Position numbers and translations under genes: made by a program. Positions 24,373 through 64,000 of a stretch of 64,000 bases of DNA are shown here, piece after piece. Where the stretch lies: positions 85,312,001 to 85,376,000 of the forward strand of contig NC_083233.1 of assembly GCF_032191835.1 (NCBI RefSeq), written 5' to 3'. Source of the stretch: Heteronotia binoei. Taxonomy: Eukaryota. The notes below the pieces were generated by a model. That model was not told where the DNA came from and ran no database searches. It was given only the letters and a program-made list of their open reading frames with translations. How positions within the stretch are numbered: position 1 is the stretch's first letter; every line of letters starts with the position of its first letter.

Positions 24373-26975
24373 AGGGAAGGCCACAGCCTCCACACAATGT
24401 TCTTGGCCCTCCAGAGGAACTGGTCGGCCAGTGAGTGTGACAGGAGGCTGGACTAGATGGGCCCCCCCTGGTCTGATCCAACAGGGCTCTTCTGATGTTC
24501 TTCTCAGGGGAAGGCCTCGGCCTCTCTGCTCTGTTGTTGGCCCTCCAGAGGAACTGGATGGCCACTGAGTGAGACAGGAGGCTAAACTGGATGGACCCTC
24601 CCTGGTCTGGCCCAGCAGGGCCCTCCTGAGGTTCTTCTCAAGGGAAGGCCTCGGCCTCTCTGCCCTGTTCTTGGCCCTCCAGAGGAACTGGGTGGCCACT
24701 GAGTGAGAAAGGAGGCTGGACAGGGTGGATCCTCCCTGGTCTGATCCAGCAGGGCTCTTCTGAAGCACTTCTCAGGGGAAGGCCTTGGACTCTCTGCCCT
24801 GCAGTTGGCCCTTCAGAGGAGCTGGCTGGCCACTGAGTGAGACAGAAGGCTGGACTGGATGGACCCTCCCTGGTCTGACCCAGCAGGGCTCTTCTGATGT
24901 TCTTCTCAGGGGAAGGCCTCGGCCTCTCTGCCCTGCAGTTGGCCCTTCAGAGGAGCTGGCTGGCCACTGAGTGAGACAGAAGGCTGGATTAGATGGACCC
25001 TCCCTGGTCTGACCCAGCAGGGCTCTTCTGATGCTCTTCACAGGGGAAGGCCTCGGCCTCTCTGCCCTGTTGCTGGCCCTCCAGAGGAACTGGTTGGCCA
25101 CTGAGTGAGACAGGAGGCTGGGCTAGATGGACCCTCCCTGGTCTGATCCAGCAGGGCTCTTCTGAGGTTCTTCTCAGGGGAAGGCCGAGGCCTCCCTGCC
25201 GTTGTTGGCCCTCCAGAGGAACTGGCTGGCCACTGAATGAGACAGGAGGCTGGACTATATGGACCCTCCCTGGTCTGATCCAGCAGGGCTCGTCTGAGGT
25301 TCTTCTCAGGGTAAGGCCTCGGCCTCTCTGCCCTGTTGTTGGCCCTCCAGAGGAACTGGCTGGCCACTGTGTGAGGAAAAAGAGGCTGGAGTAGATGGAT
25401 CCTCACTAGTCTGACCCAGCAGGGCTCTTCTGATGTTCTTCTCAGGGGAAGGCCTCGGCCTCTCTGCCCCGTTGTTGTCCCTCCAGAGGAACTGGTTGGC
25501 CACTGTGAGACAGGAGGCTGGACTAGATGGACCCTCCCTGGTCTGATCCGGCAGGGCTGTTCTGATGCTCTTCTCAGGGGAAGGCCTCGGCCTCTCTGCC
25601 CTGTTGCTGGCCCTCCAGAGGAACTGGTTGGTCACTGAGTGAGACAGGAGGCTGGGCTAGATGGACCCTCCCTGGTCTGATCCAGCAGGGCTCTTCTGAG
25701 GTTCTTCTCAGGGGAAGGCCTCGGCCTCTCTGCCCTGTTGTTGGCCCTCCAGAGGAACTGGTTGGCCACTGTGTGAGACAGGAGGCTGGACTAGATGGAC
25801 CCTCCCTGGTCTGATCCAGCAGGGCTCTTCTGAGGTTCTCCTCAGGGGAAGGCCTCAGCCTCTCTGCCCTGTTGTTGGCCCTCCAGAGGAACAGGTTGGC
25901 CACTGTGTGAGACAGGAGGCTGGACTAGATGGACCCTCCCTGGTCTGATCCGGCAGGGCTCTTCTGATGCTCTTCTCAGGGGAAGACCTCAGCCTCCCTG
26001 CCCTGTTGTGGGCCCTCCAGAGGCACTGGCTGGCCACTGTGTGAGACAAAAGCCTGGACTAGATGGACCCTCCCTGGTCTGACCCAGCAGGGCTCTCCTG
26101 ATGTTCTTCTCAGGGGAAGGCCTCGGTCTCTCTGCCCTGTTGTTGGCCCTCCAGAGGAACTGGTTGGCCACTGTTTGAGACAGGAGGCTGGACTAGATGG
26201 ACCCTCCCTGGTCTGATCCAGCAGGGCTATTCTGAGGTTCTCCTCAGGGGAAGGCCTCAGCTTCCCTGCCCTGTTGTGGGCCCTCCAGAGGCACTGGCTG
26301 GCCACTGTGTGAGACAAAAGCCTGGACTAGATGGACCCTCCCTGGTCTGACCCAGCAGGGCTCTCCTGATGTTCTTCTCAGGGGAAGGCCTTGACCTCTC
26401 TGCCCTGTTGTGGGCCCTCCAGAGGCACTGGCTGGCCACTGTGTGAGACAAAAGCCTGGACTAGATGGACCCTCCCTGGTCTGACCCAGCAGGGCTCTCC
26501 TGATGTTCTTCTCAGGGGAAGGCCTCGGTCTCTCTGCCCTGTTGTGGGCCCTCCAGAGGCACTGGCTGGCCACTGTGTGAGACAAAAGCCTGGACTAGAT
26601 GGACCCTCCCTGGTCTGACCCAGCAGGGCTCTCCTGATGTTCTTCTCAGGGGAAGGCCTCGGTCTCTCTGCCCTGTTGTTGGCCCTCCAGAGGAACTGGT
26701 TGGCCACTGTGTGAGACAGGAGGCTGGACTAGATGGACCCTCCCTGGTCTGATCCAGCAGGGCTATTCTGAGGTTCTCCTCAGGGGAAGACCTCAGCCTC
26801 CCTCTCCTGTTGTGGGCCCTCCAGAGGCACTGGCTGGCCACTGTGTGAGACAAAAGCCTGGACTAGATGGACCCTCCCTGGTCTGACCCAGCAGGGCTCT
26901 TCTGAGGTTCATCTCAGGGGAAGGCCTTGACCTCTCTGCCCTGTTGTTGGCCCTCCTGTGGAACTGGTTGGCCAC
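24373..26975 (+). repeat. Tandem array, ~20 x 134 bp, derived from a CR1-type 3' UTR
   Basis: The unit GGGAAGGCCTCGGCCTCTCTGCCCTG...GGACTAGATGGACC...CTGATCCAGCAGGGCTCTTCTGATGTTCTT recurs at ~134-bp spacing. Confidence 0.9.
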
Positions 26976-26981
26976 TGTGTA

Positions 26982-41783: not shown

Positions 41784-44700
41784 GAAGACGACATTGGATT
41801 TATATTCTGCCTTCCACTCAAGAGTCTCAGAGCGGCTCACAATCTCGTTTACCTTCCTCCCCCACAACAGGCACCCTGTGAGATGGGTGGGGCTGAGAGG
41901 CCTCTCACAGCAGCTGCCCTTCCAAGGACAACTCCTACAAGAGCTATGGCTGACCCAAGGCCATGCTAGCAGGTGCAAGAGGAGGAGTGGGAATCAAACC
42001 TGGTTCTCCCAGATAAGAGAGCTGTAGCTGACCCAAGGCCTTTCCAGCAGGTGCAAGCGGAGGAAGGGGGAATCAAACCCGGTTCTCCCAGATAAGAGAG
42101 CTCTGGCTGACCCAAGGCCATTCCAGCAGCTGCAAGTGGAGGAGGGGGGAATCAAACCCGGTTCTCCCAGATAAGAGAGCTCTGGCTAACCCAAGGCCAT
42201 TCCAGCAGCTGCAAGTGGAGGAGTGGGGAATCAAACCCGGTTCTCCCAGATAAGAGAGCTCTGGCTGACCCAAGGCCATTCCAGCAGCTGCAAGTGGAGG
42301 AGTGGGGAATCAAACCCGGTTCTCCCAGATAAGAGAGCTGTGGCTGACCCAAGGCCATTCCAGCAGGTGCAAGCGGAGGAGGGGGGAATCAAACCCGGTT
42401 CTCCCAGATAAGAGAGCTGTGGCTGACCCAAGACCATTCCAGCAGGTGCAAGCGGAGGAGGGGGGAATCAAACCCGGTTCTCCCAGATAAGAGAGCTCTG
42501 GCTGACCCAAGACCATTCCAGCAGGTGCAAGCGGAGGAGGGAGGAATCAGGCCCGGTTCTCTCAGATAAGAGAGCTCTGGCTGACCCAAGGCTGTTCCAG
42601 CAGGTGCAAGCGGAGGACTGGGGAATCAAACCCAATCAAGCTGTGGCTGACCCAAGGCCATTCCAGCAGCTGCAAGTGGAGGAGTGGGGAATCAATTCCG
42701 GTTCTCCCAGATAAGAGAGCTCTGGCTGACCCAAGGCCATTCCATCAGCTGTAAGTGAAGGAGTGGGGAATCAAAACCGGTTCTCCCAAATAAGAGAGCT
42801 ATGGCTGACCCATGGCCATTCCAGCAGCTGCAAGTGGAGGAGGGGGGAATCAAACCCGGTTCTCCCAGATAAGAGAGCTCTGGCTGACACAAGGCCATTC
42901 CAGCAGGTGCAAGTGAAAGAGTGGGGAATCAAACCCTGTTCTCCAAGATAAGAGAGCCATGGCTGACCCAAGGCCATTCCAGTACGTGCAAGTGGAGGAG
43001 TGGGGAATACAACCCGGTTCTCCCAGATAAGAGAGCCATGGCTGACCCAAGGCCATTCCAGCAGCTGCAAGTGGAGGAGAGGGGAATCCAACCCAGTTCT
43101 CCCAGATAAGAGAGCTCTGGCTGACCCAAGACCATTCCAGCAGCTGCAAGTGGAGGAGAGGGGAATCCAACCCAGTTCTCCCAGATAAGAGAGCTCTGGC
43201 TGACCCAAGGCCATTCCAGCAGGTGCAAATGGAGGAGTGGGGAATCAAACCCGGTTCTCCCAGATAAGAGAGCTCTGGCTGACCCAAGGCCATTCATCCA
43301 GCTGCAAGTGGAGGAGGGGGGAATCCAACCCGGTTCTCCCAGATAAGAGAGCTCTGGCTGACCCCAGGCCATTCCAGCAGCTGCAAGTGGAGGAGGGGGG
43401 AATCAAACCCGGTTCTCCCAGATAAGAGAGTTCTGGCTGACCCAAGGCCATTCCAGCAGCTGCAGGTGGAGGAGTGGGGAATCAAACCCGGTTCTCCCAG
43501 ATAAGAGAACTCTGGCTGACCCAAGGCCATTCCAGCAGCTGCAAGTGGAGGAGTGGGGAATCAAACCCTGTTCTCCCAGATAAGAGAGCTCTGGCTGACC
43601 CAAGGCCATTCCAGCAGCTGCAAGTGGAGGAGAGGGGAATCCAACCCGGTTCTCCCAGATAAGAGAGCTCTGGCTGACCCGAGGCCATTCCAGCAGCTGC
43701 AAGTGGAGGAGTGGGGAATCCAATCCGGTTCTCCCAGATAAGAGAGCTCTGGCTGACCCCAGGCCATTCCAGCAGCTGCAAGTGGAGGAGTGGGGCATCA
43801 AACCCGGTTCTCCCAGATAAGAGAGCTCTGGCTGACCCGAGGCCATTCCAGCAGCTGCAAGTGGAGGAGTGGGGAATCCAATCCGGTTCTCCCAGATAAG
43901 AGAGCTCTGGCTGACCCCAGGCCATTCCAGCAGCTGCAAGTGGAGGAGGGGGGAATCAAACCCGGTTCTCCCAGATAAGAGAGTTCTGGCTGACCCAAGG
44001 CCATTCCAGCAGCTGCAAGTGGAGGAGGGGGGAATCCAACCCGGTTCTCCCAGATAAGAGAGCTCTGGCTGACCCGAGGCCATTCCAGCAGCTGCAAGTG
44101 GAGGAGGGGGGAATCCAACCCGGTTCTCCCAGATAAGAGAGCTCTGGCTGACCCCAGGCCATTCCAGCAGCTGCAAGTGGAGGAGGGGGGAATCAAACCC
44201 GGTTCTCCCAGATAAGAGAGTTCTGGCTGACCCAAGGCCATTCCAGCAGCTGCAAGTGGAGGAGGGGGGAATCCAACCCGGTTCTCCCAGATAAGAGAGC
44301 TCTGGCTGACCCCAGGCCATTCCAGCAGCTGCAAGTGGAGGAGGGGGGAATCAAACCTGGTTCTCCCAGATAAGAGAGTTCTGGCTGACCCAAGGCCATT
44401 CCAGCAGCTGCAAGTGGAGGAGGGGGGAATCCAACCCGGTTCTCCCAGATAAGAGAGTTCTGGCTGACCCAAGGCCATGCCAGCAGCTGCAAGTGGAGGA
44501 GTGGGGACTCAAACCCGGTTCTCCCAGATAAGAGAGTTCTGGCTGACCCAAGGCCATGCCAGCAGCTGCAAGTGGAGGAGTGGGGACTCAAACCCGGTTC
44601 TCCCAGATAAGAGAGTTCTGGCTGACCCAAGGCCATTCCAGCAGCTGCAAGTGGAGGAGGGGGGAATCCAACCCGGTTCTCCCAGATAAGAGAGTTCTGG

Positions 44701-44806
44701 CTGACCCAAGGCCATGCCAGCAGCTGCAAGTGGAGGAGGGGGGACTCAAACCCGGTTCTCCCAGATAAGAGTCCGCACACTTAACCACTACTCCAAACTG
44801 GCTCTC
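41784..44806 (-). mobile_element. SINE with an internally amplified 79-bp segment
   Basis: One head (44771-44806) and one tail (41784-41940) bracket the array. Confidence 0.85.
41941..44771. repeat. Tandem array, ~36 x 79 bp, SINE-derived
   Basis: CCAGATAAGAG recurs at 79-bp spacing from 42009 to 44761, with one shortened unit near 42630-42706. Confidence 0.95.
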
Positions 44807-55220: not shown

Positions 55221-57774
55221 ATGAATTTTCTTTTGTGTTAGTGAGTGTCCAGTCCACTCATTTGCAGGCCTGGAAGTTTCACATCCCACCCTTCTGGGCC
55301 GTGATGAGCTCCCAGCAGAACAGAGCGGGGGTCGGAGGCTGGAGCTGAGGTGGTGCGGGAGCCTGGCAGGTGTCTCCAGGGCCCGCCTCTGTTGCGTGGC
55401 CCCATGCACATAAGGAGCCGGAGGTATGTGCCCCCCACAATGCTTTGGGTTTGATACAGTAAGCAAGTGAAAACATTACAGCAGAATCCTCTCTCCAGTT
55501 TATCAAAACAATATTTAATGACATAGGAGTGATTACTTGAGGCTATTTGCTCTTTCTTGCCAAAAGCAAACAGGTTCCCCAGGAAAACACTCTTCAGTGA
55601 AAATGCTCCATGTCAGTTACAGGTTTTCAAAATCAGCTTTTCTAATTTATTTTATTCTATTCAGAGCAAGATACAACTCTCTATTCTAGGACATAATAAA
55701 ACCCCTCTTGGCAAAACAGCAGCCTGATTGGTTGGGACTGTGGTGCGTCAACCCTTGGCCAAGTCAAGAGTATTTGCATGCCATTGGTTGAATCCGCTTC
55801 TGTCTCCCACCCATCCAAGTGGCTGCTGCTAGCCAGCAAAGTTCATTATGTCAGTAAACGGCAACCAACCTTAGTTCTGGCAGTTGCTGGCTCTCCCTAC
55901 TCTCCCATTGGCTGAGCTCCTGTCACATTCCCTCAATTAGCTGAGGAAGGAGGAGGGAAACAGCCAGAGAAAGGCTTCCCTTGATTGGCTGAGGACTCCT
56001 ACCTTCCTGGAAAGCGGAACAGATGGTATCCTGTGAGAACAGAGCAGATATAGAGAGAGATACGGTGGGAAAGTGAGACACATGGAGAGACTGAAGTTTC
56101 ATGCTTAAGACCCACAACATTATCAGAGACGGACTGTTGGTCTGGACGTATCACTCAAGGCCTCTGAGGGAGAACTCGTTGGGGCCAGTTCCAGATTGGT
56201 AGGAAAGCCCTGCAGATCCTGTGGTGGAGGCCATAGGCATTAGGGCTTTAGAGCAAGGTCTGCCAGACCCACGTTCTTGCTGTGGAAGCTGACGGGAGGA
56301 TTTCAGACCAGTCACAAACTTCCAGCCTAACCTGCCTCACAGGGTTGTTGTTCAGGAGGAGAGAATGATGTAAGCTGCTTTGGTCCCCGCTGCTGTGGAG
56401 AAAGACTGTCCTTTCCCTACAGGAGGCTGCAGGGAGGGGGGATGTAATGGAAAGCTTAAGTTGAGCAGATAAAGAGAAGGAGATAGGGTTCCCAACTCCA
56501 GGTTAAGAAATTCCTCAAGATTTAAGGGGTGCGGCCTGGAGAAGGTGGGATCTGAAAAGGGGATGGGATCTCCAACAGGTGCAATGCCATGCACTCCGCC
56601 CTCCAAACCAGCAGTTTCCTCTGGGGAACCATTGTTGCCGATCTCCAGGTGAGGGCTGAGATCACTCAGTATTACAAGAGCTCTCTGGCTGGCAGAGATC
56701 TCCCCTGGAGGTGGTGGGGGTGAATGGGGGGGGGGCACTTGCCCATAGCCTCTTTCTAGAGCCGTTGTATTTTTCTTCACAAGGGGCCTTATTACTTGTA
56801 TAAACATAAAGCAGTTAGGAAAGAATGCGCACCCTGTTATACGTACGCATGCATTTTTGTAAAAACATCTCAGTGCCGTGTTAATACATTTTTAGCACTC
56901 TGAGTCTTAACCAAGAACACCAAAATGCGTGACTGCTTTTTTCTCATACATGAGACTGCTGCTTTCCCAGTCACTTGACACCCCAAGAAAAGGCTGGATA
57001 GAAATGTTTTCACAAATAAACCGATGTACCCCATTCGTGAACTGTATCCTCACTTGTGTTTAGTCAGACATTCCTGCCATTCTCAAATGCTTCTTTGCAC
57101 TTGGGCCCAGACAGGAATCTCCTGCTATTCCGCTGTTTCTGGTCTGCTAGAGGCCATACCAGTCAGTCAGTCACTCCTCTGCTCCAAAGCAGCTCTGCTG
57201 TTCTGGATCTCTGGCCTTCCTGTCTGGGTCTCAGTGGAGAGCGAGCCTGTGGAGGCAGCTGCTGTTCCACTACCTCTGGCCAGATGCATGAGCTAGACGA
57301 CAGAAATGCAAAATCTTATTCTCACACTCTGGAAAGAATAAAATGACACAAAAAGTCAGAGTTTTAAACCATTTTTTTTTTAAAAATAAACATCCACGAT
57401 TTGTGCTAAGGTTTGGTTTCCCAGAACAGCTGCCTTTTTCTTTGGCTGACGGAGCAGCTGTAAGCTGAGCCAGAGAGAAGAACACCGAGATCCCAACTGC
57501 ACCAGCTCCCTCACAGGCCTCCTCCCCCCACCACCCCTGCTGCACTTGCTGATGACCTAAGCGGAAGCCTCAGCAGAGCGCCCCCTGCTGCTGCTCAGGG
57601 CGTCCATCCGTTCAGCCTTGGGTGGGGGCGTGCCCTGAGCTCTGCCAGAGGATCCAAGGGCACAGGCCCCTCTGCTTCCGGAGCAGGCAGACCATGGAGT
57701 CGACTTCAGTTTGGTACGAAGCCAGGAGCAAATGGCAGTCTTGCAGCTGACTGCCTCTTGGCCAGTCTCTGAAG

Positions 57775-60121
57775 CTAAGTCCCGTCGCTGTTCCTGATGA
57801 TCTCTAACTGGTCCTGGGGAGGGTAAAGGGGCTCCTCGTGGAAGGCCCACGTCTCTCGGGGCACCTCCCTCAGCTTCTGCCACGGGAAGCGGTGGACGGC
57901 CGTGTCGTTGAACACATCCAGAAACCTGTCATGGGGAGGGAGGGCGTCTTCCTCCGAGGCTGTTAATATCTGCCCATGGTTGGCACAGGGAGAGAATCGG
58001 TCGTGAGGGGGCCTGCCAGCAACAGGCCCAGAGCAATGGGGCAGCTCACACACAGGCCAAGCAGAGCTCCCCTCCCCCTTGCATGACCCATCTTAACCTC
58101 AGAATTCACTGGATATAACTCAAGAAATACGCTATTGTTGAGAAAGGTCCACTCTGAGAGGCTGCAGAGGTTCTGGGGTTGCCTGCGCAGCAGAGGGTGG
58201 CACAGCTCAACAACTGGCTGATGTGAGAGCAGCGTGTGCCACCCCCATCCCACCCCCCAACATGGAAGGGGACGTGAGCTCTTGGGCCAGATGTCAGAAC
58301 ACAACCAGATGGGGGGTGGGGAAGTCCCGAGTCAAGTTTCCCCCAAACTGGCAGCTGGAGACACAGCCATGTCCTCACCCCACCCACACTCACCCAGCCT
58401 ACCTTGGCAATGTAAGCGTAATCCCTTTGGAATATCCTGCCCGGGACCCTAGAAGCCAAAGGGACAGAAAGCATGAGGGGCAGGTTGGGGGCCAGCTAGA
58501 GAGGCCCCTTTACCCCCTCCCCAGCAGTCCTTTGGGGAGGGGGCACCTTTCTTCAATCCCCTTGAAACTGTTGCCTACGATGACCATTTTGGACAAGGCC
58601 TCTGCTGACCAGTTGCTCCACAGCAGGTTGTTGTAGAGGGCTTTGCCACAGTGGACCATGTAGAAGACTGTGGGCTCATCTATGGGACGCTTCCCCTCCT
58701 GCAATCAAGACCAGCAGCAAACTAGAAACTCCAGCCAGCCCCAACCCTCCCCACCACCAGATTGTGGGGACAGGCAGCCCCCTTACCCCCAGCCCCTCCC
58801 CCAATGAGGGCCACCTGGTGCTCTGGGCATCCCCCAGGCAAAGATGGCACGCACCTCATTCCACGAGAGGACAGAGAAGCCAAGGCTGCTGAGAACTTCC
58901 CTTTCCAACAGGGAGAAAGCAGGATCAAAGACACAGCAAAGCCCCTCCGGAACCTGCCAGGGAGGGAGAGAAGGGGAGGAGGCAGGCTGCTGGTGGGTGG
59001 GGCCTCTGGGCCAGTGGGCTGAGCCCTGCCAAGGGAGGGGGCAGAGACACTCCGGAACCTGCCAGGGAGGGAGAGAAGCGGAGGAGGCAGGCTGCTGGGA
59101 GAGGGGAGGGGTCTCTGGGCCAGTGGGCTGAGCCCTGCCAAGGGAGGGGGCAGAGACACTCCTCCGGAACCTGCCAGGGAGGGAGAGAAGCGGAGGAGGC
59201 AGGCTGCTGGTGGGTGGGGCCTCTGGGCCAGTGGGCTGAGCCCTGCCAAGGGAGGGGGCAGAGACACTCCTCCGGAACCTGCCAGGGAGGGAGAGAAGCG
59301 GAGGAGGCAGGCTGCTGGGAGAGGGGAGGGGTCTCTGGGCCAGTGGGCTGAGCCCTGCCAAGGGAGGGGGCAGAGACACTCCTCCGGAACCTGCCAGGGA
59401 GGGAGAGAAGCGGAGGAGGCAGGCTGCTGGGAGAGGGGTGGGGCCTCTGGGCCAGTGGGCTGAGCCCTGCCAAGGGAGGGGCAGACACTCACCTGGAGTT
59501 CCTGCAGCAGCAGCAGCAGAAATGCCAGCTGGAAGCGGGCCTTAAAGCAGGAAGAGAAGTTGCCCAGGCCATAACACACACACCGCAAGCAGGCTCTTCC
59601 AGGCAGGTGGGCTGGAGGGCACAGCTGCAGCTCCTCCAATGCCAAGAGGGCATCATCCCCGGTGGGCATGGGCAAATCTTTCCTGTGTGCCAGGACTTCT
59701 CGCAGGGATCTTGAGAGGATTTCTGGAGCAGGCGGACAAGCAGCACAGGAGTCGGGGTGTACCACCACGCCCGACAACACTTCATCCCAGCAGAAACCAC
59801 CAAGGCCTCCCGGCCTCCTTCTCAGGAGGAAAAAGACCCCTCACTTGCCAGGCAAGGCAGGAAAGCCAGCATAGCCCCCTCTGCCAGGCTGGCTTTGTGA
59901 AGCCCAAGTCACAATTTCCTTGGTAGCTGCCTGGCTGGGCGTTTTCTGGGGAACAAAGGGTGCGTAAATGAAGCAGGACTGAGAGGCAGGTGGGCAGCCA
60001 TCTCCCCCTCCCCGGAGCCATGTGGACAATCTCAAGAGTTTCTCAAAAGGATGAAAACAGACTTTGAAGCCAGGACTTACTCAGACTTGAATTCCAGAAC
60101 TCAGAGTCCAGCAGTTCTGCC
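57775..60121 (-). CDS. SRRD: SRR1 domain-containing protein, exons 2-7 (exon 1 not found in the window)
   Basis: Exons (minus): 60121-60081 (41 nt), 59722-59493 (230 nt, CVCYGLGNF), 58953-58855 (99 nt, CVFDPAFS), 58698-58547 (152 nt, [22 protein letters not shown]), 58448-58403 (46 nt), 57969-57775 ([10 protein letters not shown]...LEIIRN). Phases are consistent and the gene converges on TFIP11 as in human. Confidence 0.9.
58945..59490. repeat. 5-copy 102-112-bp repeat filling SRRD intron 3
   Basis: CCGGAACCTGCCAGGGAGGGAGAGAAG recurs five times. Confidence 0.92.
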
Positions 60122-61875
60122 CTGTGAGAAAGAAAGACAAGGAGGGGAGAAAAAGTAAATTTGGGGACTCTCTGTGTGGCGTGTGGGAGACAAGAGGCAG
60201 GGTTGAGGTCTCCCCACCTGTCACAGAGACCAGGGGTCAAACCCTGCAGGCACAAGAAAAGGCCACCCTGAGCTCCACCCCCTTCCACGAGGTTATGGAG
60301 GCGACACTTCCAAGGGGACCTGAGCCCCAGCATCTCTTGCTGTAAGGCCTCCCTCTTGCCTGCATTTAGCTTAGATACAAGCCTCACAGAAATCAGCAGG
60401 GGGGGGGCAATAGAGCAAGCCTGGAAGAGCAGCGAAGGAACTGAGCTGGCAGGCAGAAGGCCCTCTGTCCCAGCACAGGAAGGAAGTGGTCCGGTATCAG
60501 GCCACTTTTTCTCAGCTACCAGTTTGCAACATCACGTTCATATTACTGGCCGACTTTGCAGAGTTGCTGCATGGATTACAAAGAATTGTGCACTTCCTAG
60601 CACTGGGGAGGGCCCACAGTTCAGGCTAGCCAAAGCTCATCTGATCTGGGAAGACAAGCAGGGTCGGCCTGGTGAGTTCTTGGATGGGAGACTAGGGAGG
60701 AACTCCAGGGTCATGACACATTTCTGAGCATTTCCTGCCCTCCAATTTTGCATCTACCTGACGGCCCCTCCTACCTTCCACCCCCATGGCTCAGCGGCAG
60801 AGCCTCTGCTTGGCCTCAGAAGGCCTCAGCCCCAATCCTCAGCAGCAGCTCCAACTCAAAGGATCAGCCGGGGTTAGCTTATTGTTACAATGGTCCTTGG
60901 GCCACTTGCACAGAAGTAAAACGCCAATGTACAAGATTCCAAGATTTTAAAAATACTAAAAACATTTTTAAATCCATCTAATATTCAGTTACCATAACCA
61001 TCTGCTATCGAACTGCCATGCAATTCCCGCAACCTGAGTCTGGCCATGCAGAAACTGGCTATTTGGAAGGCAATCAGATAAAAGAAACTCACGTTTAGCC
61101 TTTTCTGGCAATCCCAATTTTTTTTTCCAATCAGCAGGGTGATGAACGCCTTACGTGCCACTTTATAATAAGGGCACATGAAAAAGAGGCGCTCTGCAAT
61201 CTAGCCTCCCTTAACGGACAGAAAGCAATATTCTCCTATTTCCCTTGAAGTACAGCAGGCAGGAGGACAGAGCACCTTGCCAGAGTGAAGGGTCTTCTAA
61301 AGTCTTTTACTTCCGAAGATGTTAAATAGGTTGGTAGGTGACTGTCGAGGCTTCCAGCAGAGACAATGGAACAAGGGTCTGCTTCTGTATAAGGCAGCTT
61401 TGTTTGTTCATCTGCATGCTAATTTTTGTGGACGTGGACTAAGGTTGTGTATAATTAAAGGTGTTCTTGCCTGGCTCATTGGAGCCTGCAGGACTGAGCT
61501 TGGGGGCTCGGGAACAAGGGGCAGCAGGATCCAAATCCCTGCTGGCCTGCTCCAAGCATGGCCCCCCTGCTGGTTTGAATGACCCAATGGTGCCCAAGCA
61601 CGGGAACCTTGAAGTGTATATTAACTTAACTTATGAATGTAATTTTATTTGTTTTAATTGCTTAATTGTTTGTTGTAATATTGTATTTTACTATCATGGT
61701 ATATACCGTGTCGTGTTAGCCGCCCTGAGCCTGCCTTTGGCGGGGGAGGGCGGGATACAAAAATAAATTTATTATTATTATTATTATATAGTGGCCCCCT
61801 TCTCCAGCTAGAGTTCAGCCTTTGCCATGCTGTATCTAATAAAGGAGATATGATCACAACAGCAGCATCTCTTCC

Positions 61876-62517: not shown

Positions 62518-62555
<38 letters not shown>

Positions 62556-62927
62556 ATATTTGGCCGCTGTGTGACACAGAATGTTGGACTGGATGGGCCA
62601 TTGGCCTGATCTAACATGGCTTCTCTTATGTTCTTATGTCGACTGCAGGGTGACATGATAGAGGTTTACAAGATAATGCATGGGATGGAGAAAGTAGAGA
62701 AAGAAATACCTTTCTCCCTTTCTCACAATACAAGAACTCGTGGGCATTCCATGAAATTGCTGAGCAGAAAGGTTAAAACGGATAAAAGGAAGTACTTCTT
62801 CACCCAAAGGGTGATTAACATGTGGAATTCACTGCCACAGGAGGTGGTGGCGGCCACAAGCATAGCCACCTTCAAGAGGAGGTTAGATAAAAATATGGAG
62901 CAGAGGTCCATCAGTGGCTATTAGCCA

Positions 62928-63018
<91 letters not shown>

Positions 63019-63095
63019 CGCTGTGTGACACAGAATGTTGGACTGGATGGGCCATTGGCCTGATCTAACATGGCTTCTTTTATGTTCTTATGTTC
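61876..63095 (+). mobile_element. Young 5'-truncated CR1 LINE with a duplicated 3' end
   Basis: Uninterrupted ORF2 C-terminus at 61876-62514. The segment 62231-62637 is repeated at 62638-~63091. Confidence 0.92.
62931..63014. repeat. (TG)23(TA)19 compound microsatellite; (TG)16 at 62521-62552
   Basis: Read directly from the sequence. Confidence 0.95.
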
Positions 63096-64000
63096 CTTGC
63101 ATGGAACCCACTCTATTATATTGACTCTCTTGTGCACTGTCACTTGGGAGTCAGCGCAAGGAAATATCCCGCTCAAGCACTGTTTCCACCAGCCTCCTGC
63201 CTCCCTCTATGGCTACCCAAAAGCCCCAAGGAGAGCAGAAAAGTTGACAGAAAACATGTTTCTCTGTCCGTGGAGGTTCTGTTCTTGGCCACCCTAGGTA
63301 ACACCTCCGGAAAGGTCTGTCGCCCATGACCAGGTAGTGGCAAGGGGGCCAGAGTAGGTTTTTGGGAGCCCCAGATCCAGGCCCCCTCCCCCCACTTAGC
63401 ATTCAAATAACTAGCAGGCCCTTGGATGGCCTCTTGCAGTCCCAGCTCCCTTGCAGGCCTGTTGCGAGGATGAGAAGGGATGCCTGTGGGAGGGAGTTCC
63501 TTGGAGGAAGGATGAGTGAAAGCAGTGCTTGCCCTTCCTTCTGCACTCCTGGCCTTTGCAGTCTAGCAGCTAAAAGACAATCAGACATGTCCCCCCAAAA
63601 CCAACAGGTAGCAGCAGCATTAATCGGTCTCGAAAGACGGATACAGCGAGAGGATCAGACCCTCGTCCTCCATTGTCAGTATTGCTGGGGACGGCACGCC
63701 TGCTAGGCTGCCCTCTCTCCCTGAATGGGGCTGCCCAGCGCCCCTCCAGGGCAGAACAGGTTCTCCTCCCGCAGCACCTCCGCTGGCTTCTGCTGTGTGC
63801 AGAGCAAGACCGCTGCCAGGGAGTCACGCCCCGAAGTGAGAAGAAGACGCCTCCCTGGGATGCTCCCGACGACGACTCCGAGAAGCACCAGAAAAGACTT
63901 GAGGGACGAGGGAGGCCTTTGGGCATCTGGCCGACCACAGCTGAGAGCAGGAGGCTGCCCGATGCACCCCTTGCCAACCCAGCAAAGCTCTCTTCCTTAA

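What the first reader, a model, noticed from the sequence alone, without database searches (positions are those of the whole stretch)
58855..59493. SRRD intron 3 is a tandem array of whole introns with five competing 3' splice sites
Each unit is the ancestral ~100-nt intron minus its GT, plus the first ~9 nt of exon 4, joined through GAG microhomology. One donor (59492) therefore faces five near-identical acceptors TTCTCTCCCTCCCTGGCAG|GTTCCGGAG, with exon starts at 59390, 59278, 59170, 59058 and 58953. Relative to 58953 these add 437, 325, 217 and 105 nt. The three nearest the donor frameshift, and only the two most distal keep frame (59058 adds 35 aa). Correct protein needs the spliceosome to skip three acceptors, so copy number could act as an expression or isoform rheostat. 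The single donor and the acceptor positions are read from the sequence; the regulatory role is inference.
Basis: partly seen in the sequence, partly recalled or inferred. Interest (0 to 1): 0.78.

Follow-up and report, generated by a model that had tools for sequence, protein, structure and literature searches.

The report
Silent decoy splice acceptors in gecko SRRD
In the gecko Heteronotia binoei, a once-tiny intron of the SRRD gene has grown to 539 bases by copying itself and its splice acceptor four extra times. The RNA available shows only normal splicing to the acceptor beside the real exon, so this looks like a harmless repeat rather than a regulatory dial.

Summary
SRRD intron 3 (minus strand, 59492..58954) is a 4.9-copy tandem array of 105-112 nt units. 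It has one strong donor and five identical acceptors, with exon-start bases at 59390, 59278, 59170, 59058 and 58953.

The window is Heteronotia binoei. A second assembly or haplotype carries the same five-unit array, so it is not an assembly artefact. Four other geckos have an 87-99 nt intron here, so each unit is close to a whole ancestral intron and the expansion happened on the Heteronotia lineage.

The "competing acceptors / rheostat" reading is not supported. In four RNA runs from two studies, the only junction across the array is 59493 to 58953. Depth over the whole array is zero, and the in-frame +35 aa form, which NMD could not hide, is absent. The only H. binoei SRRD protein in the searched database uses 58953. 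RNA depth is low, so decoy use below roughly 15-30% is not excluded.

Best reading: a young, probably neutral minisatellite that spans a splice junction. It mirrors, on the acceptor side, the donor-repeating arrays known in human F7, CBS, IFI6 and LMNB2. Unchecked notes from this scan report similar boundary-spanning arrays in other genes of this genome (SNRPB, TAF6, AUP1, ATXN1L).

The parts
60081..60121 (-). SRRD exon 2 (41 nt, encodes [13 protein letters not shown])
   Evidence: RNA joint 59722/60081 and loose end at 60122 leading to exon 1 outside the window; 13/13 aa match to H. binoei SRR1-like protein P0081
59493..59722 (-). SRRD exon 3 (230 nt); its end encodes the start of the SRR1 domain
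   Evidence: RNA joints at both ends; Pfam SRR1 profile positions 15-47, E 1.7e-09; 76/76 aa to P0081
59487..59495 (-). The single 5' splice site CAG|GTGAGT (GT at 59492-59491)
   Evidence: Sequence; the only GT in the region with good donor context; used in all spliced reads and contigs
58954..59492 (-). Intron 3 as actually removed (539 nt), almost entirely the tandem array
   Evidence: Joint 'skips 539' in X2, X3, X6 and X7; TRF array 58944-59485
59382..59492 (-). Unit U0: donor-proximal copy, ending in decoy acceptor 1 (exon-like start at 59390; use would add 437 nt and shift the frame)
59270..59381 (-). Unit U1 (112 nt), decoy acceptor 2 (start 59278; +325 nt, frameshift, stop inside exon 4)
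   Evidence: identical to U3
59162..59269 (-). Unit U2 (108 nt), decoy acceptor 3 (start 59170; +217 nt, frameshift, stop inside exon 4)
59050..59161 (-). Unit U3 (112 nt), decoy acceptor 4 (start 59058; +105 nt, in frame, would insert 35 aa into the SRR1 domain)
58945..59049 (-). Unit U4 (105 nt), ending in the authentic acceptor and the first 9 nt of exon 4
   Evidence: the acceptor used in all RNA
58855..58953 (-). SRRD exon 4 (99 nt, 33 codons), followed by donor GAG|GTGCGT at 58854
   Evidence: RNA joints at both ends; Pfam SRR1 profile 53-80; 32/33 aa to P0081
58547..58698 (-). SRRD exon 5 (152 nt), core of the SRR1 domain
   Evidence: RNA joints; Pfam SRR1 profile 81-126, E 3.1e-15

Best explanation
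This is a young minisatellite, specific to the Heteronotia lineage, that spans a splice junction in intron 3 of the gecko SRRD (SRR1-like) gene. A segment running from about the third to sixth base of an ancestral ~90-100 nt intron to the first 9-12 bases of exon 4 was duplicated head to tail at a GAG microhomology. A two-unit block was then duplicated again. The result is five near-identical sets of polypyrimidine tract and AG (and presumably branch site) behind one donor. The transcript is spliced from that donor to the last acceptor, the one next to real exon 4, so the whole 539-nt array leaves as one intron and the four upstream acceptors stay silent. The likely reason (inferred, not shown) is exon definition. 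All five sites are identical from -20 to +9. Only the last is followed by the real exon and its 5' splice site 99 nt downstream; each decoy is followed by C-rich intron sequence. The array is most likely neutral.
For: Array and five exact acceptors. Gene identity: SRR1 Pfam hits on exons 3-5, 97-100% identity per exon to NCBI 'SRR1-like protein [Heteronotia binoei]', and HPS4-like and TFIP11 neighbours. Real, not an artefact: a second assembly or haplotype, 99.18% identical over 9.2 kb, has the same spacing of 112/108/112/105 and one substitution in the array. Lineage-specific: intron 3 is 99, ~91, 87 and 94 nt in Gekko kuhli, G. japonicus, Eublepharis and Paroedura, and aligns to a single unit. 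Recent: U1 and U3 are identical; U2 and U4 differ by one substitution and one indel. Splicing: the only joint across the array is 59493 to 58953, seen in two RNA contigs (depth 11.5 and 9.0) and in 7 raw reads from two runs. Depth is zero in all six bins 58960-59463 in all four runs, while two other introns (5 and 6) show pre-mRNA reads in X7. The only H. binoei SRRD protein found uses the same junction. Context differs downstream: 46-51% C and 10-13 CCC triplets after each decoy, against 24% C and 1 CCC in exon 4. Published parallels: donor-side arrays in F7, LMNB2 and PDGF use only the exon-adjacent site (PMC1557585). Under exon definition, the sites closest across the exon are favoured (PMC9225289).
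Against: RNA depth is low: 7 junction reads plus two contigs. Decoy use below roughly 15-30% is therefore not excluded, and NMD would hide the three frameshifting forms further. The DNA of the animals that gave the RNA was not examined, so their copy number is unknown. Both flanking introns are short (102 nt to the first decoy, 156 nt downstream). For that architecture PMC9225289 reports a preference for the upstream acceptor, so the exon-definition explanation is not the default expectation and has not been tested here. No single discriminating cis-element was pinned down; GGG triplets and predicted RNA accessibility do not differ usefully between the sites.
Confidence: 0.75

Rival explanations
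1. One reading: the five acceptors truly compete. A share of transcripts uses the decoys, three of which frameshift and are degraded by NMD, so array length tunes SRRD output or isoform ratio.
For: The five sites are identical from -20 to +9. The first decoy recreates the ancestral ~100-nt intron with the donor. Short introns favour the upstream acceptor in human data (PMC9225289). NMD could hide three of the four products. In CBS and IFI6, two pseudo-donors of comparable arrays are used (PMC1557585).
Against: No read or contig touches the array in four RNA runs. The in-frame +105 nt form, which NMD cannot remove, is absent. There is a single database protein model. Copy number is the same in two haplotypes or assemblies, so no variation is known on which a rheostat could act.
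Confidence: 0.12
2. Stepwise (recursive) splicing: the donor first joins a decoy acceptor. The regenerated CAG|GTTCCG then acts as a new donor to the next acceptor, and so on. The final mRNA would be the same as from one-step splicing.
For: Every acceptor is an AG|GT junction, and the final product would be indistinguishable in mRNA reads.
Against: No intermediate junction reads were seen. The intron is only 539 nt, whereas known recursive sites lie in very long introns (my own knowledge).
Confidence: 0.03
3. The array is an assembly artefact, or is absent from the animals that gave the RNA, so nothing is being skipped.
For: mRNA junctions cannot reveal the copy number of the source DNA. No intronic reads fall in the array.
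Against: Two different sequences of the locus, 13 substitutions and 9 indels apart, share the same five-unit structure with diverged units and a 220-nt higher-order period. An assembler does not produce such an array by error.
Confidence: 0.05
4. RNA secondary structure hides the four decoy acceptors and leaves only the last one open.
For: The region is GC-rich and folds strongly (local MFE -57 to -64 kcal/mol).
Against: Predicted unpaired probabilities of the pyrimidine tract, the AG and the branch region are similar for all five sites, in both the global and the local folds.
Confidence: 0.03

Closest known systems
Human F7 intron 7 37-bp VNTR (also LMNB2 100-bp and PDGF 81-bp intronic arrays), as described in PMC1557585
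   Same: The array's boundary monomer spans an exon-intron boundary, so an exact splice site is repeated many times inside the intron. Only the site next to the real exon is used, and the pseudo-sites are normally silent.
   Different: Those arrays repeat the 5' donor; this one repeats the complete 3' signal (polypyrimidine tract, AG and first exon bases, and presumably the branch site). F7 is polymorphic (5-9 copies) and has been dissected with 50 minigenes; here copy-number variation and mechanism are untested. Here each unit is nearly a whole ancestral intron.
Human CBS intron 13 31-bp VNTR and IFI6 (6-16) intron 2 minisatellite (cited in PMC1557585)
   Same: Boundary-spanning minisatellites that offer many identical splice sites.
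   Different: In CBS and IFI6 two pseudo-donors are used as well as the authentic one. Here no decoy use was seen. Both are donor-side.
Potato RdRp tandem duplication across an intron-exon boundary (PMC4974935)
   Same: A tandem duplication crossing the 3' intron-exon boundary, so the duplicate inherits the putative branch site, pyrimidine tract and AG.
   Different: In potato the upstream acceptor is used, and a donor in the duplicated exon piece creates a new intron. Here the duplicated exon piece is only 9-12 nt and has no usable donor, and the whole array is removed as one intron.
Competing alternative 3' splice sites and the proximity rule (PMC9225289)
   Same: Several acceptors of equal strength, more than 20 nt apart, each with its own pyrimidine tract and presumably its own branch point.
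   Different: For short flanking introns that study reports a preference for the upstream acceptor. Here the most downstream, exon-proximal site is the only one seen, which matches the pattern they report for exon definition.

Membership tests
Boundary-spanning (splice-junction-repeating) minisatellite, F7/CBS/IFI6/LMNB2 type | Head-to-tail array of monomers tens to about 100 bp long inside an intron | tested here: met
   Period 112 x 4.9 copies, 93% matches, score 938
Boundary-spanning (splice-junction-repeating) minisatellite, F7/CBS/IFI6/LMNB2 type | A terminal monomer spans the exon-intron boundary, so the exact splice site is repeated within the intron | tested here: met
   Five exact copies of the 28-nt acceptor string, including 9 exon bases
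Boundary-spanning (splice-junction-repeating) minisatellite, F7/CBS/IFI6/LMNB2 type | The repeated site is the 5' donor, as in all members listed in PMC1557585 | tested here: not met
   The repeated site is the 3' acceptor. There is only one usable donor. This is therefore a mirror-image variant, not a plain member.
Boundary-spanning (splice-junction-repeating) minisatellite, F7/CBS/IFI6/LMNB2 type | The authentic, exon-adjacent site is used and the pseudo-sites are silent or minor | tested here: met
   Only the 59493 to 58953 joint is seen, and array depth is zero in 4 RNA runs, at low depth
Boundary-spanning (splice-junction-repeating) minisatellite, F7/CBS/IFI6/LMNB2 type | Copy number is polymorphic (VNTR) | tested here: inconclusive
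   Two haplotypes or assemblies have the same five units. No population data.
SRRD / SRR1-like gene (Pfam PF07985) | SRR1 domain encoded across the exons flanking the array | tested here: met
   Exons 3, 4 and 5 hit profile positions 15-47, 53-80 and 81-126. Exon 4 alone scores 23.7 bits, just under the 24-bit cut-off.
SRRD / SRR1-like gene (Pfam PF07985) | Orthology and synteny with annotated vertebrate SRRD | tested here: met
   97-100% identity per exon to the H. binoei SRR1-like protein. The gene lies between an HPS4-like gene (Intu_longin domains) and TFIP11.
Regulated alternative 3' splice-site choice coupled to NMD (the 'rheostat') | Two or more of the acceptors are used in mature or NMD-stabilised RNA | tested here: not met
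   No decoy junction and no array coverage; sensitivity is limited to roughly 15-30%
Regulated alternative 3' splice-site choice coupled to NMD (the 'rheostat') | Output changes with copy number or condition | not testable with these tools
   Needs genotyped individuals with matched RNA
Recursive splice sites | Acceptor placed directly against a strong regenerated 5' splice site | tested here: not met
   CAG|GTTCCG scores about -4 bits against +8.5 for the real donor, on a crude matrix

The most novel reading that the evidence does not exclude
The decoys may be used at a low level that the thin RNA data cannot exclude. Three of the four products frameshift and would go to NMD, so array length would act as a heritable, quantitative brake on SRRD output. 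If boundary-spanning arrays are as common in this gecko genome as the scan's unchecked notes suggest, they could together form a natural library for measuring splice-site choice rules in vivo.
Probability: 0.12. Interest if true: 0.6.

Novelty: new variant of a known kind. Interest (0 to 1): 0.35.

Why it matters
Here four exact copies of a working 3' splice signal sit between the donor and the real acceptor. The first of them recreates the ancestral ~100-nt intron with the donor. Yet the RNA at hand shows only the last, exon-adjacent acceptor in use. So this is a natural experiment: what lies downstream of an acceptor (the real exon and its donor) appears to outweigh closeness to the donor and order of transcription. 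That is the opposite of the preference reported for short introns. It is an acceptor-side counterpart of the human F7, CBS and LMNB2 donor arrays. It offers a ready-made minigene series of 1 to 5 units for testing 3' splice-site choice. For SRRD biology itself there is no sign of any consequence.

Tried and rejected
1. RNA structure as the discriminator. Partition-function accessibility is similar at all five sites, so this was rejected.
2. G triplets as markers of intron identity. There is one GGG after each decoy but three GGG positions (a GGGG run plus one more GGG) in real exon 4, so they do not discriminate.
3. Hidden donors or pseudo-exons in the array. Every internal GT has poor context.
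4. Recursive splicing. The regenerated donor is too weak and no intermediates were seen.
5. A +35 aa isoform in public protein sets. Two word-index searches with natural SRRD proteins found a single H. binoei protein, without the insert.
6. Published acceptor-side boundary minisatellites. Two full-text searches found none; they returned only the donor-side cases and the potato duplication. The library is partial, so this does not prove absence.
7. Two paper queries failed on a syntax rule and were re-worded.
8. Joined step left out. Exons were searched one by one by reference, and full-length searches used natural database proteins returned by the tools.
9. Not examined. Copy number in other individuals therefore remains unknown.

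Full report
**What is there**

On the minus strand, the window carries exons 2 to 7 of SRRD (SRR1-like). Exon 3 is 59722..59493 and ends in CAG followed by GTGAGT. Exon 4 is 58953..58855 and exon 5 is 58698..58547. RNA joints fix all of these borders.

Translated one exon at a time, exons 3, 4 and 5 hit Pfam SRR1 at profile positions 15-47, 53-80 and 81-126. The intron in question therefore interrupts the domain between two adjacent stretches.

Between exon 3 and exon 4, Tandem Repeats Finder reports an array at 58944-59485. It reads as period 112 x 4.9 copies (93% matches) or period 220 x 2.5 copies (96%). The 28-nt string made of the pyrimidine tail, CAG and GTTCCGGAG occurs exactly five times, against none expected by chance. 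The exon-like start bases are 59390, 59278, 59170, 59058 and 58953.

The five units align at 93% identity and are identical from -20 to +9 around each acceptor. The only nearby difference is G to C at -21 in the last unit. No other GT in the array has usable donor context. Use of the decoys would add 437, 325, 217 or 105 nt, with remainders 2, 1, 1 and 0 modulo 3. The +105 form is open and would insert 35 residues into the SRR1 domain.

**Whose genome, and is the array real**

A search of 1.84 billion representative proteins with the exon 3 peptide found squamate SRRD proteins. A follow-up search with one of them, a natural Varanus protein, listed SRR1-like proteins from many reptiles.

Exon-by-exon BLASTP showed identity of 100% (exons 2, 3, 5) and 32/33 (exon 4) to NCBI 'SRR1-like protein [Heteronotia binoei]', P0081. 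That model joins ...QELQ directly to VPEG..., which is acceptor 58953.

Its genomic locus, L001 from GCA_032191835.1, aligns to the window at 99.18% over 9.2 kb, with 13 substitutions and 9 indels. It is therefore a different haplotype or assembly. It carries the same five acceptors with the same spacing of 112/108/112/105 and differs by a single substitution inside the array. An assembly artefact is thus very unlikely. Copy number does not differ between the two sequences available.

**Origin**

Intron 3 is 99 nt in Gekko kuhli, about 91 nt in G. japonicus, 87 nt in Eublepharis macularius and 94 nt in Paroedura picta. These introns align along a single Heteronotia unit. The array is therefore a Heteronotia-lineage expansion of a tiny ancestral intron.

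The other geckos begin exon 4 with ATTCC(T/C).A.GAG. The GAGGAG at three of the four unit joins may therefore preserve 12 ancestral exon bases joined to intron base +6, rather than 9 joined to +3.

U1 and U3 are identical. U2 and U4 differ by one substitution and one 3-nt indel. U1-type and U2-type units differ by three substitutions and a 4-nt indel. The simplest history is one junction-spanning duplication, then divergence, then a recent duplication of a 220-nt dimer.

**What the RNA shows**

I laid two RNA contig sets (X2, X3, one study) and two raw-read RNA runs (X6, X7, another study) on 57700-60200.

- The only joint across the array is 59493 to 58953 ('skips 539'). It is seen in one contig per contig set (depth 11.5 and 9.0, with 98 and 232 nt on the two sides), in 6 reads from 5 start points in X7, and in 1 read in X6.
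- All six depth bins covering 58960-59463 are zero in all four runs. In X7, introns 5 and 6 do carry pre-mRNA reads.
- The in-frame +105 nt form, which NMD could not remove, is absent.
- Two protein searches found only one H. binoei SRRD protein, without any insert.

Limits: depth is low. My rough bound on any one decoy form is 15-30%. The copy number in the animals that gave the RNA is unknown.

**How it most likely works**

Shown: the whole array is removed as one 539-nt intron, using the exon-adjacent acceptor.

Inferred: the choice is made by what lies downstream. The five sites are identical from -20 to +9, so they should score equally with any window-based tool. Predicted accessibility of the tract, the AG and the branch region is similar for all five. 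What differs begins at +10. Each decoy is followed by the next unit (46-51% C, 10-13 CCC triplets). The last acceptor is followed by real exon 4 (24% C) and its donor GAG|GTGCGT 99 nt away.

[quoted passage not shown] It also mirrors the donor-side arrays, where only the exon-adjacent donor is used (PMC1557585). It is not the default expectation, though. The flanking introns are short (102 nt to the first decoy, 156 nt downstream), and for that architecture PMC9225289 reports a preference for the upstream acceptor. That mismatch is the interesting part of this case.

**Rivals**

It has no positive evidence.
- Stepwise splicing through the AG|GT junctions would give the same mRNA. No intermediates were seen.
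- Structural masking is not supported.
- An artefact is contradicted by the second haplotype or assembly.

**Comparison with what is known**

Minisatellites whose first monomer spans an exon-intron boundary, and so repeat a donor inside the intron, are described for human F7, CBS, IFI6, LMNB2 and PDGF. The pseudo-sites are silent in F7, LMNB2 and PDGF, and partly used in CBS and IFI6 (PMC1557585).

A single duplication across a 3' intron-exon boundary is described in potato RdRp, where it created a new intron (PMC4974935). I found no published multi-copy acceptor-side array in two full-text searches. The library is partial, so this is weak evidence. I therefore file this as a mirror-image variant of a known kind.

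Unchecked notes from this scan report many boundary-spanning arrays in this same genome (SNRPB, TAF6, AUP1, three neighbouring genes, and an ATXN1L acceptor array). The window itself holds several large minisatellites. This suggests a genome-wide tendency rather than something special to SRRD. I did not test those notes.

Exons were searched singly by reference, and full-length searches used natural proteins returned by the tools. No N stretch lies in the region.

**Verdict**

The structural interpretation is supported. The regulatory interpretation is not supported by the RNA available. Interest is modest: a clean natural decoy-acceptor series, with no evidence of function.

Noticed in passing
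window 58448-58855 (exon 5 = 58547-58698): RNA contigs in X2 and X3 contain a joint from exon 4 straight to exon 6 (58855 to 58448), at depth 6.9 and 9.4. This skips the 152-nt exon 5, which would shift the frame and delete the core of the SRR1 domain. Its depth is comparable to the normal exon 5-6 joint (3 and 4.3). It was not listed for the raw-read runs.
   Followed up: no
window 58036-58371 and 58456-58539: Run X7 has reads inside introns 6 and 5 (depth about 0.5-2.7) but none in intron 3 (the array) or intron 4. The array intron therefore does not appear to be slowly removed.
   Followed up: no
proteins P0097 and P0119 (Thamnophis elegans isoforms X1 and X2): Snake isoform X2 carries a 32-aa insertion exactly at the exon 3/4 junction. 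This fits in-frame retention of a 96-nt intron 3, so this tiny intron is sometimes retained in other squamates.
   Followed up: partly
L003:3335-3455 (Gekko japonicus) and protein P0103: The G. japonicus sequence lacks the canonical CAG|GTGAGT at the end of exon 3. Its predicted protein has 7 more residues at this junction than the other geckos, and the end of that segment (CLCLPPWQ) looks translated from the intron's pyrimidine tract. This is probably a model forced around a changed donor.
   Followed up: no
window 41940-44771 and 24398-26980: Two large minisatellites: 79 nt x 36 copies and 134 nt x 19 copies, both at 90-92% matches. The first was noted separately by the scan as an array of Pol III B-boxes. 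The window is rich in minisatellites.
   Followed up: no
window 62540-63100: Two copies of a dispersed element, each next to an (AT)n/(AC)n microsatellite, lie in SRRD intron 1. The two haplotypes or assemblies differ here by 30-nt and 6-nt microsatellite indels.
   Followed up: no
window 58865 and 58882 (exon 4): Two exon 4 variants. Position 58865 differs between the window and assembly GCA_032191835.1 and probably accounts for the single amino-acid difference from P0081. Position 58882 (A>G on the plus strand) appears in RNA from X3, X6 and X7.
   Followed up: partly
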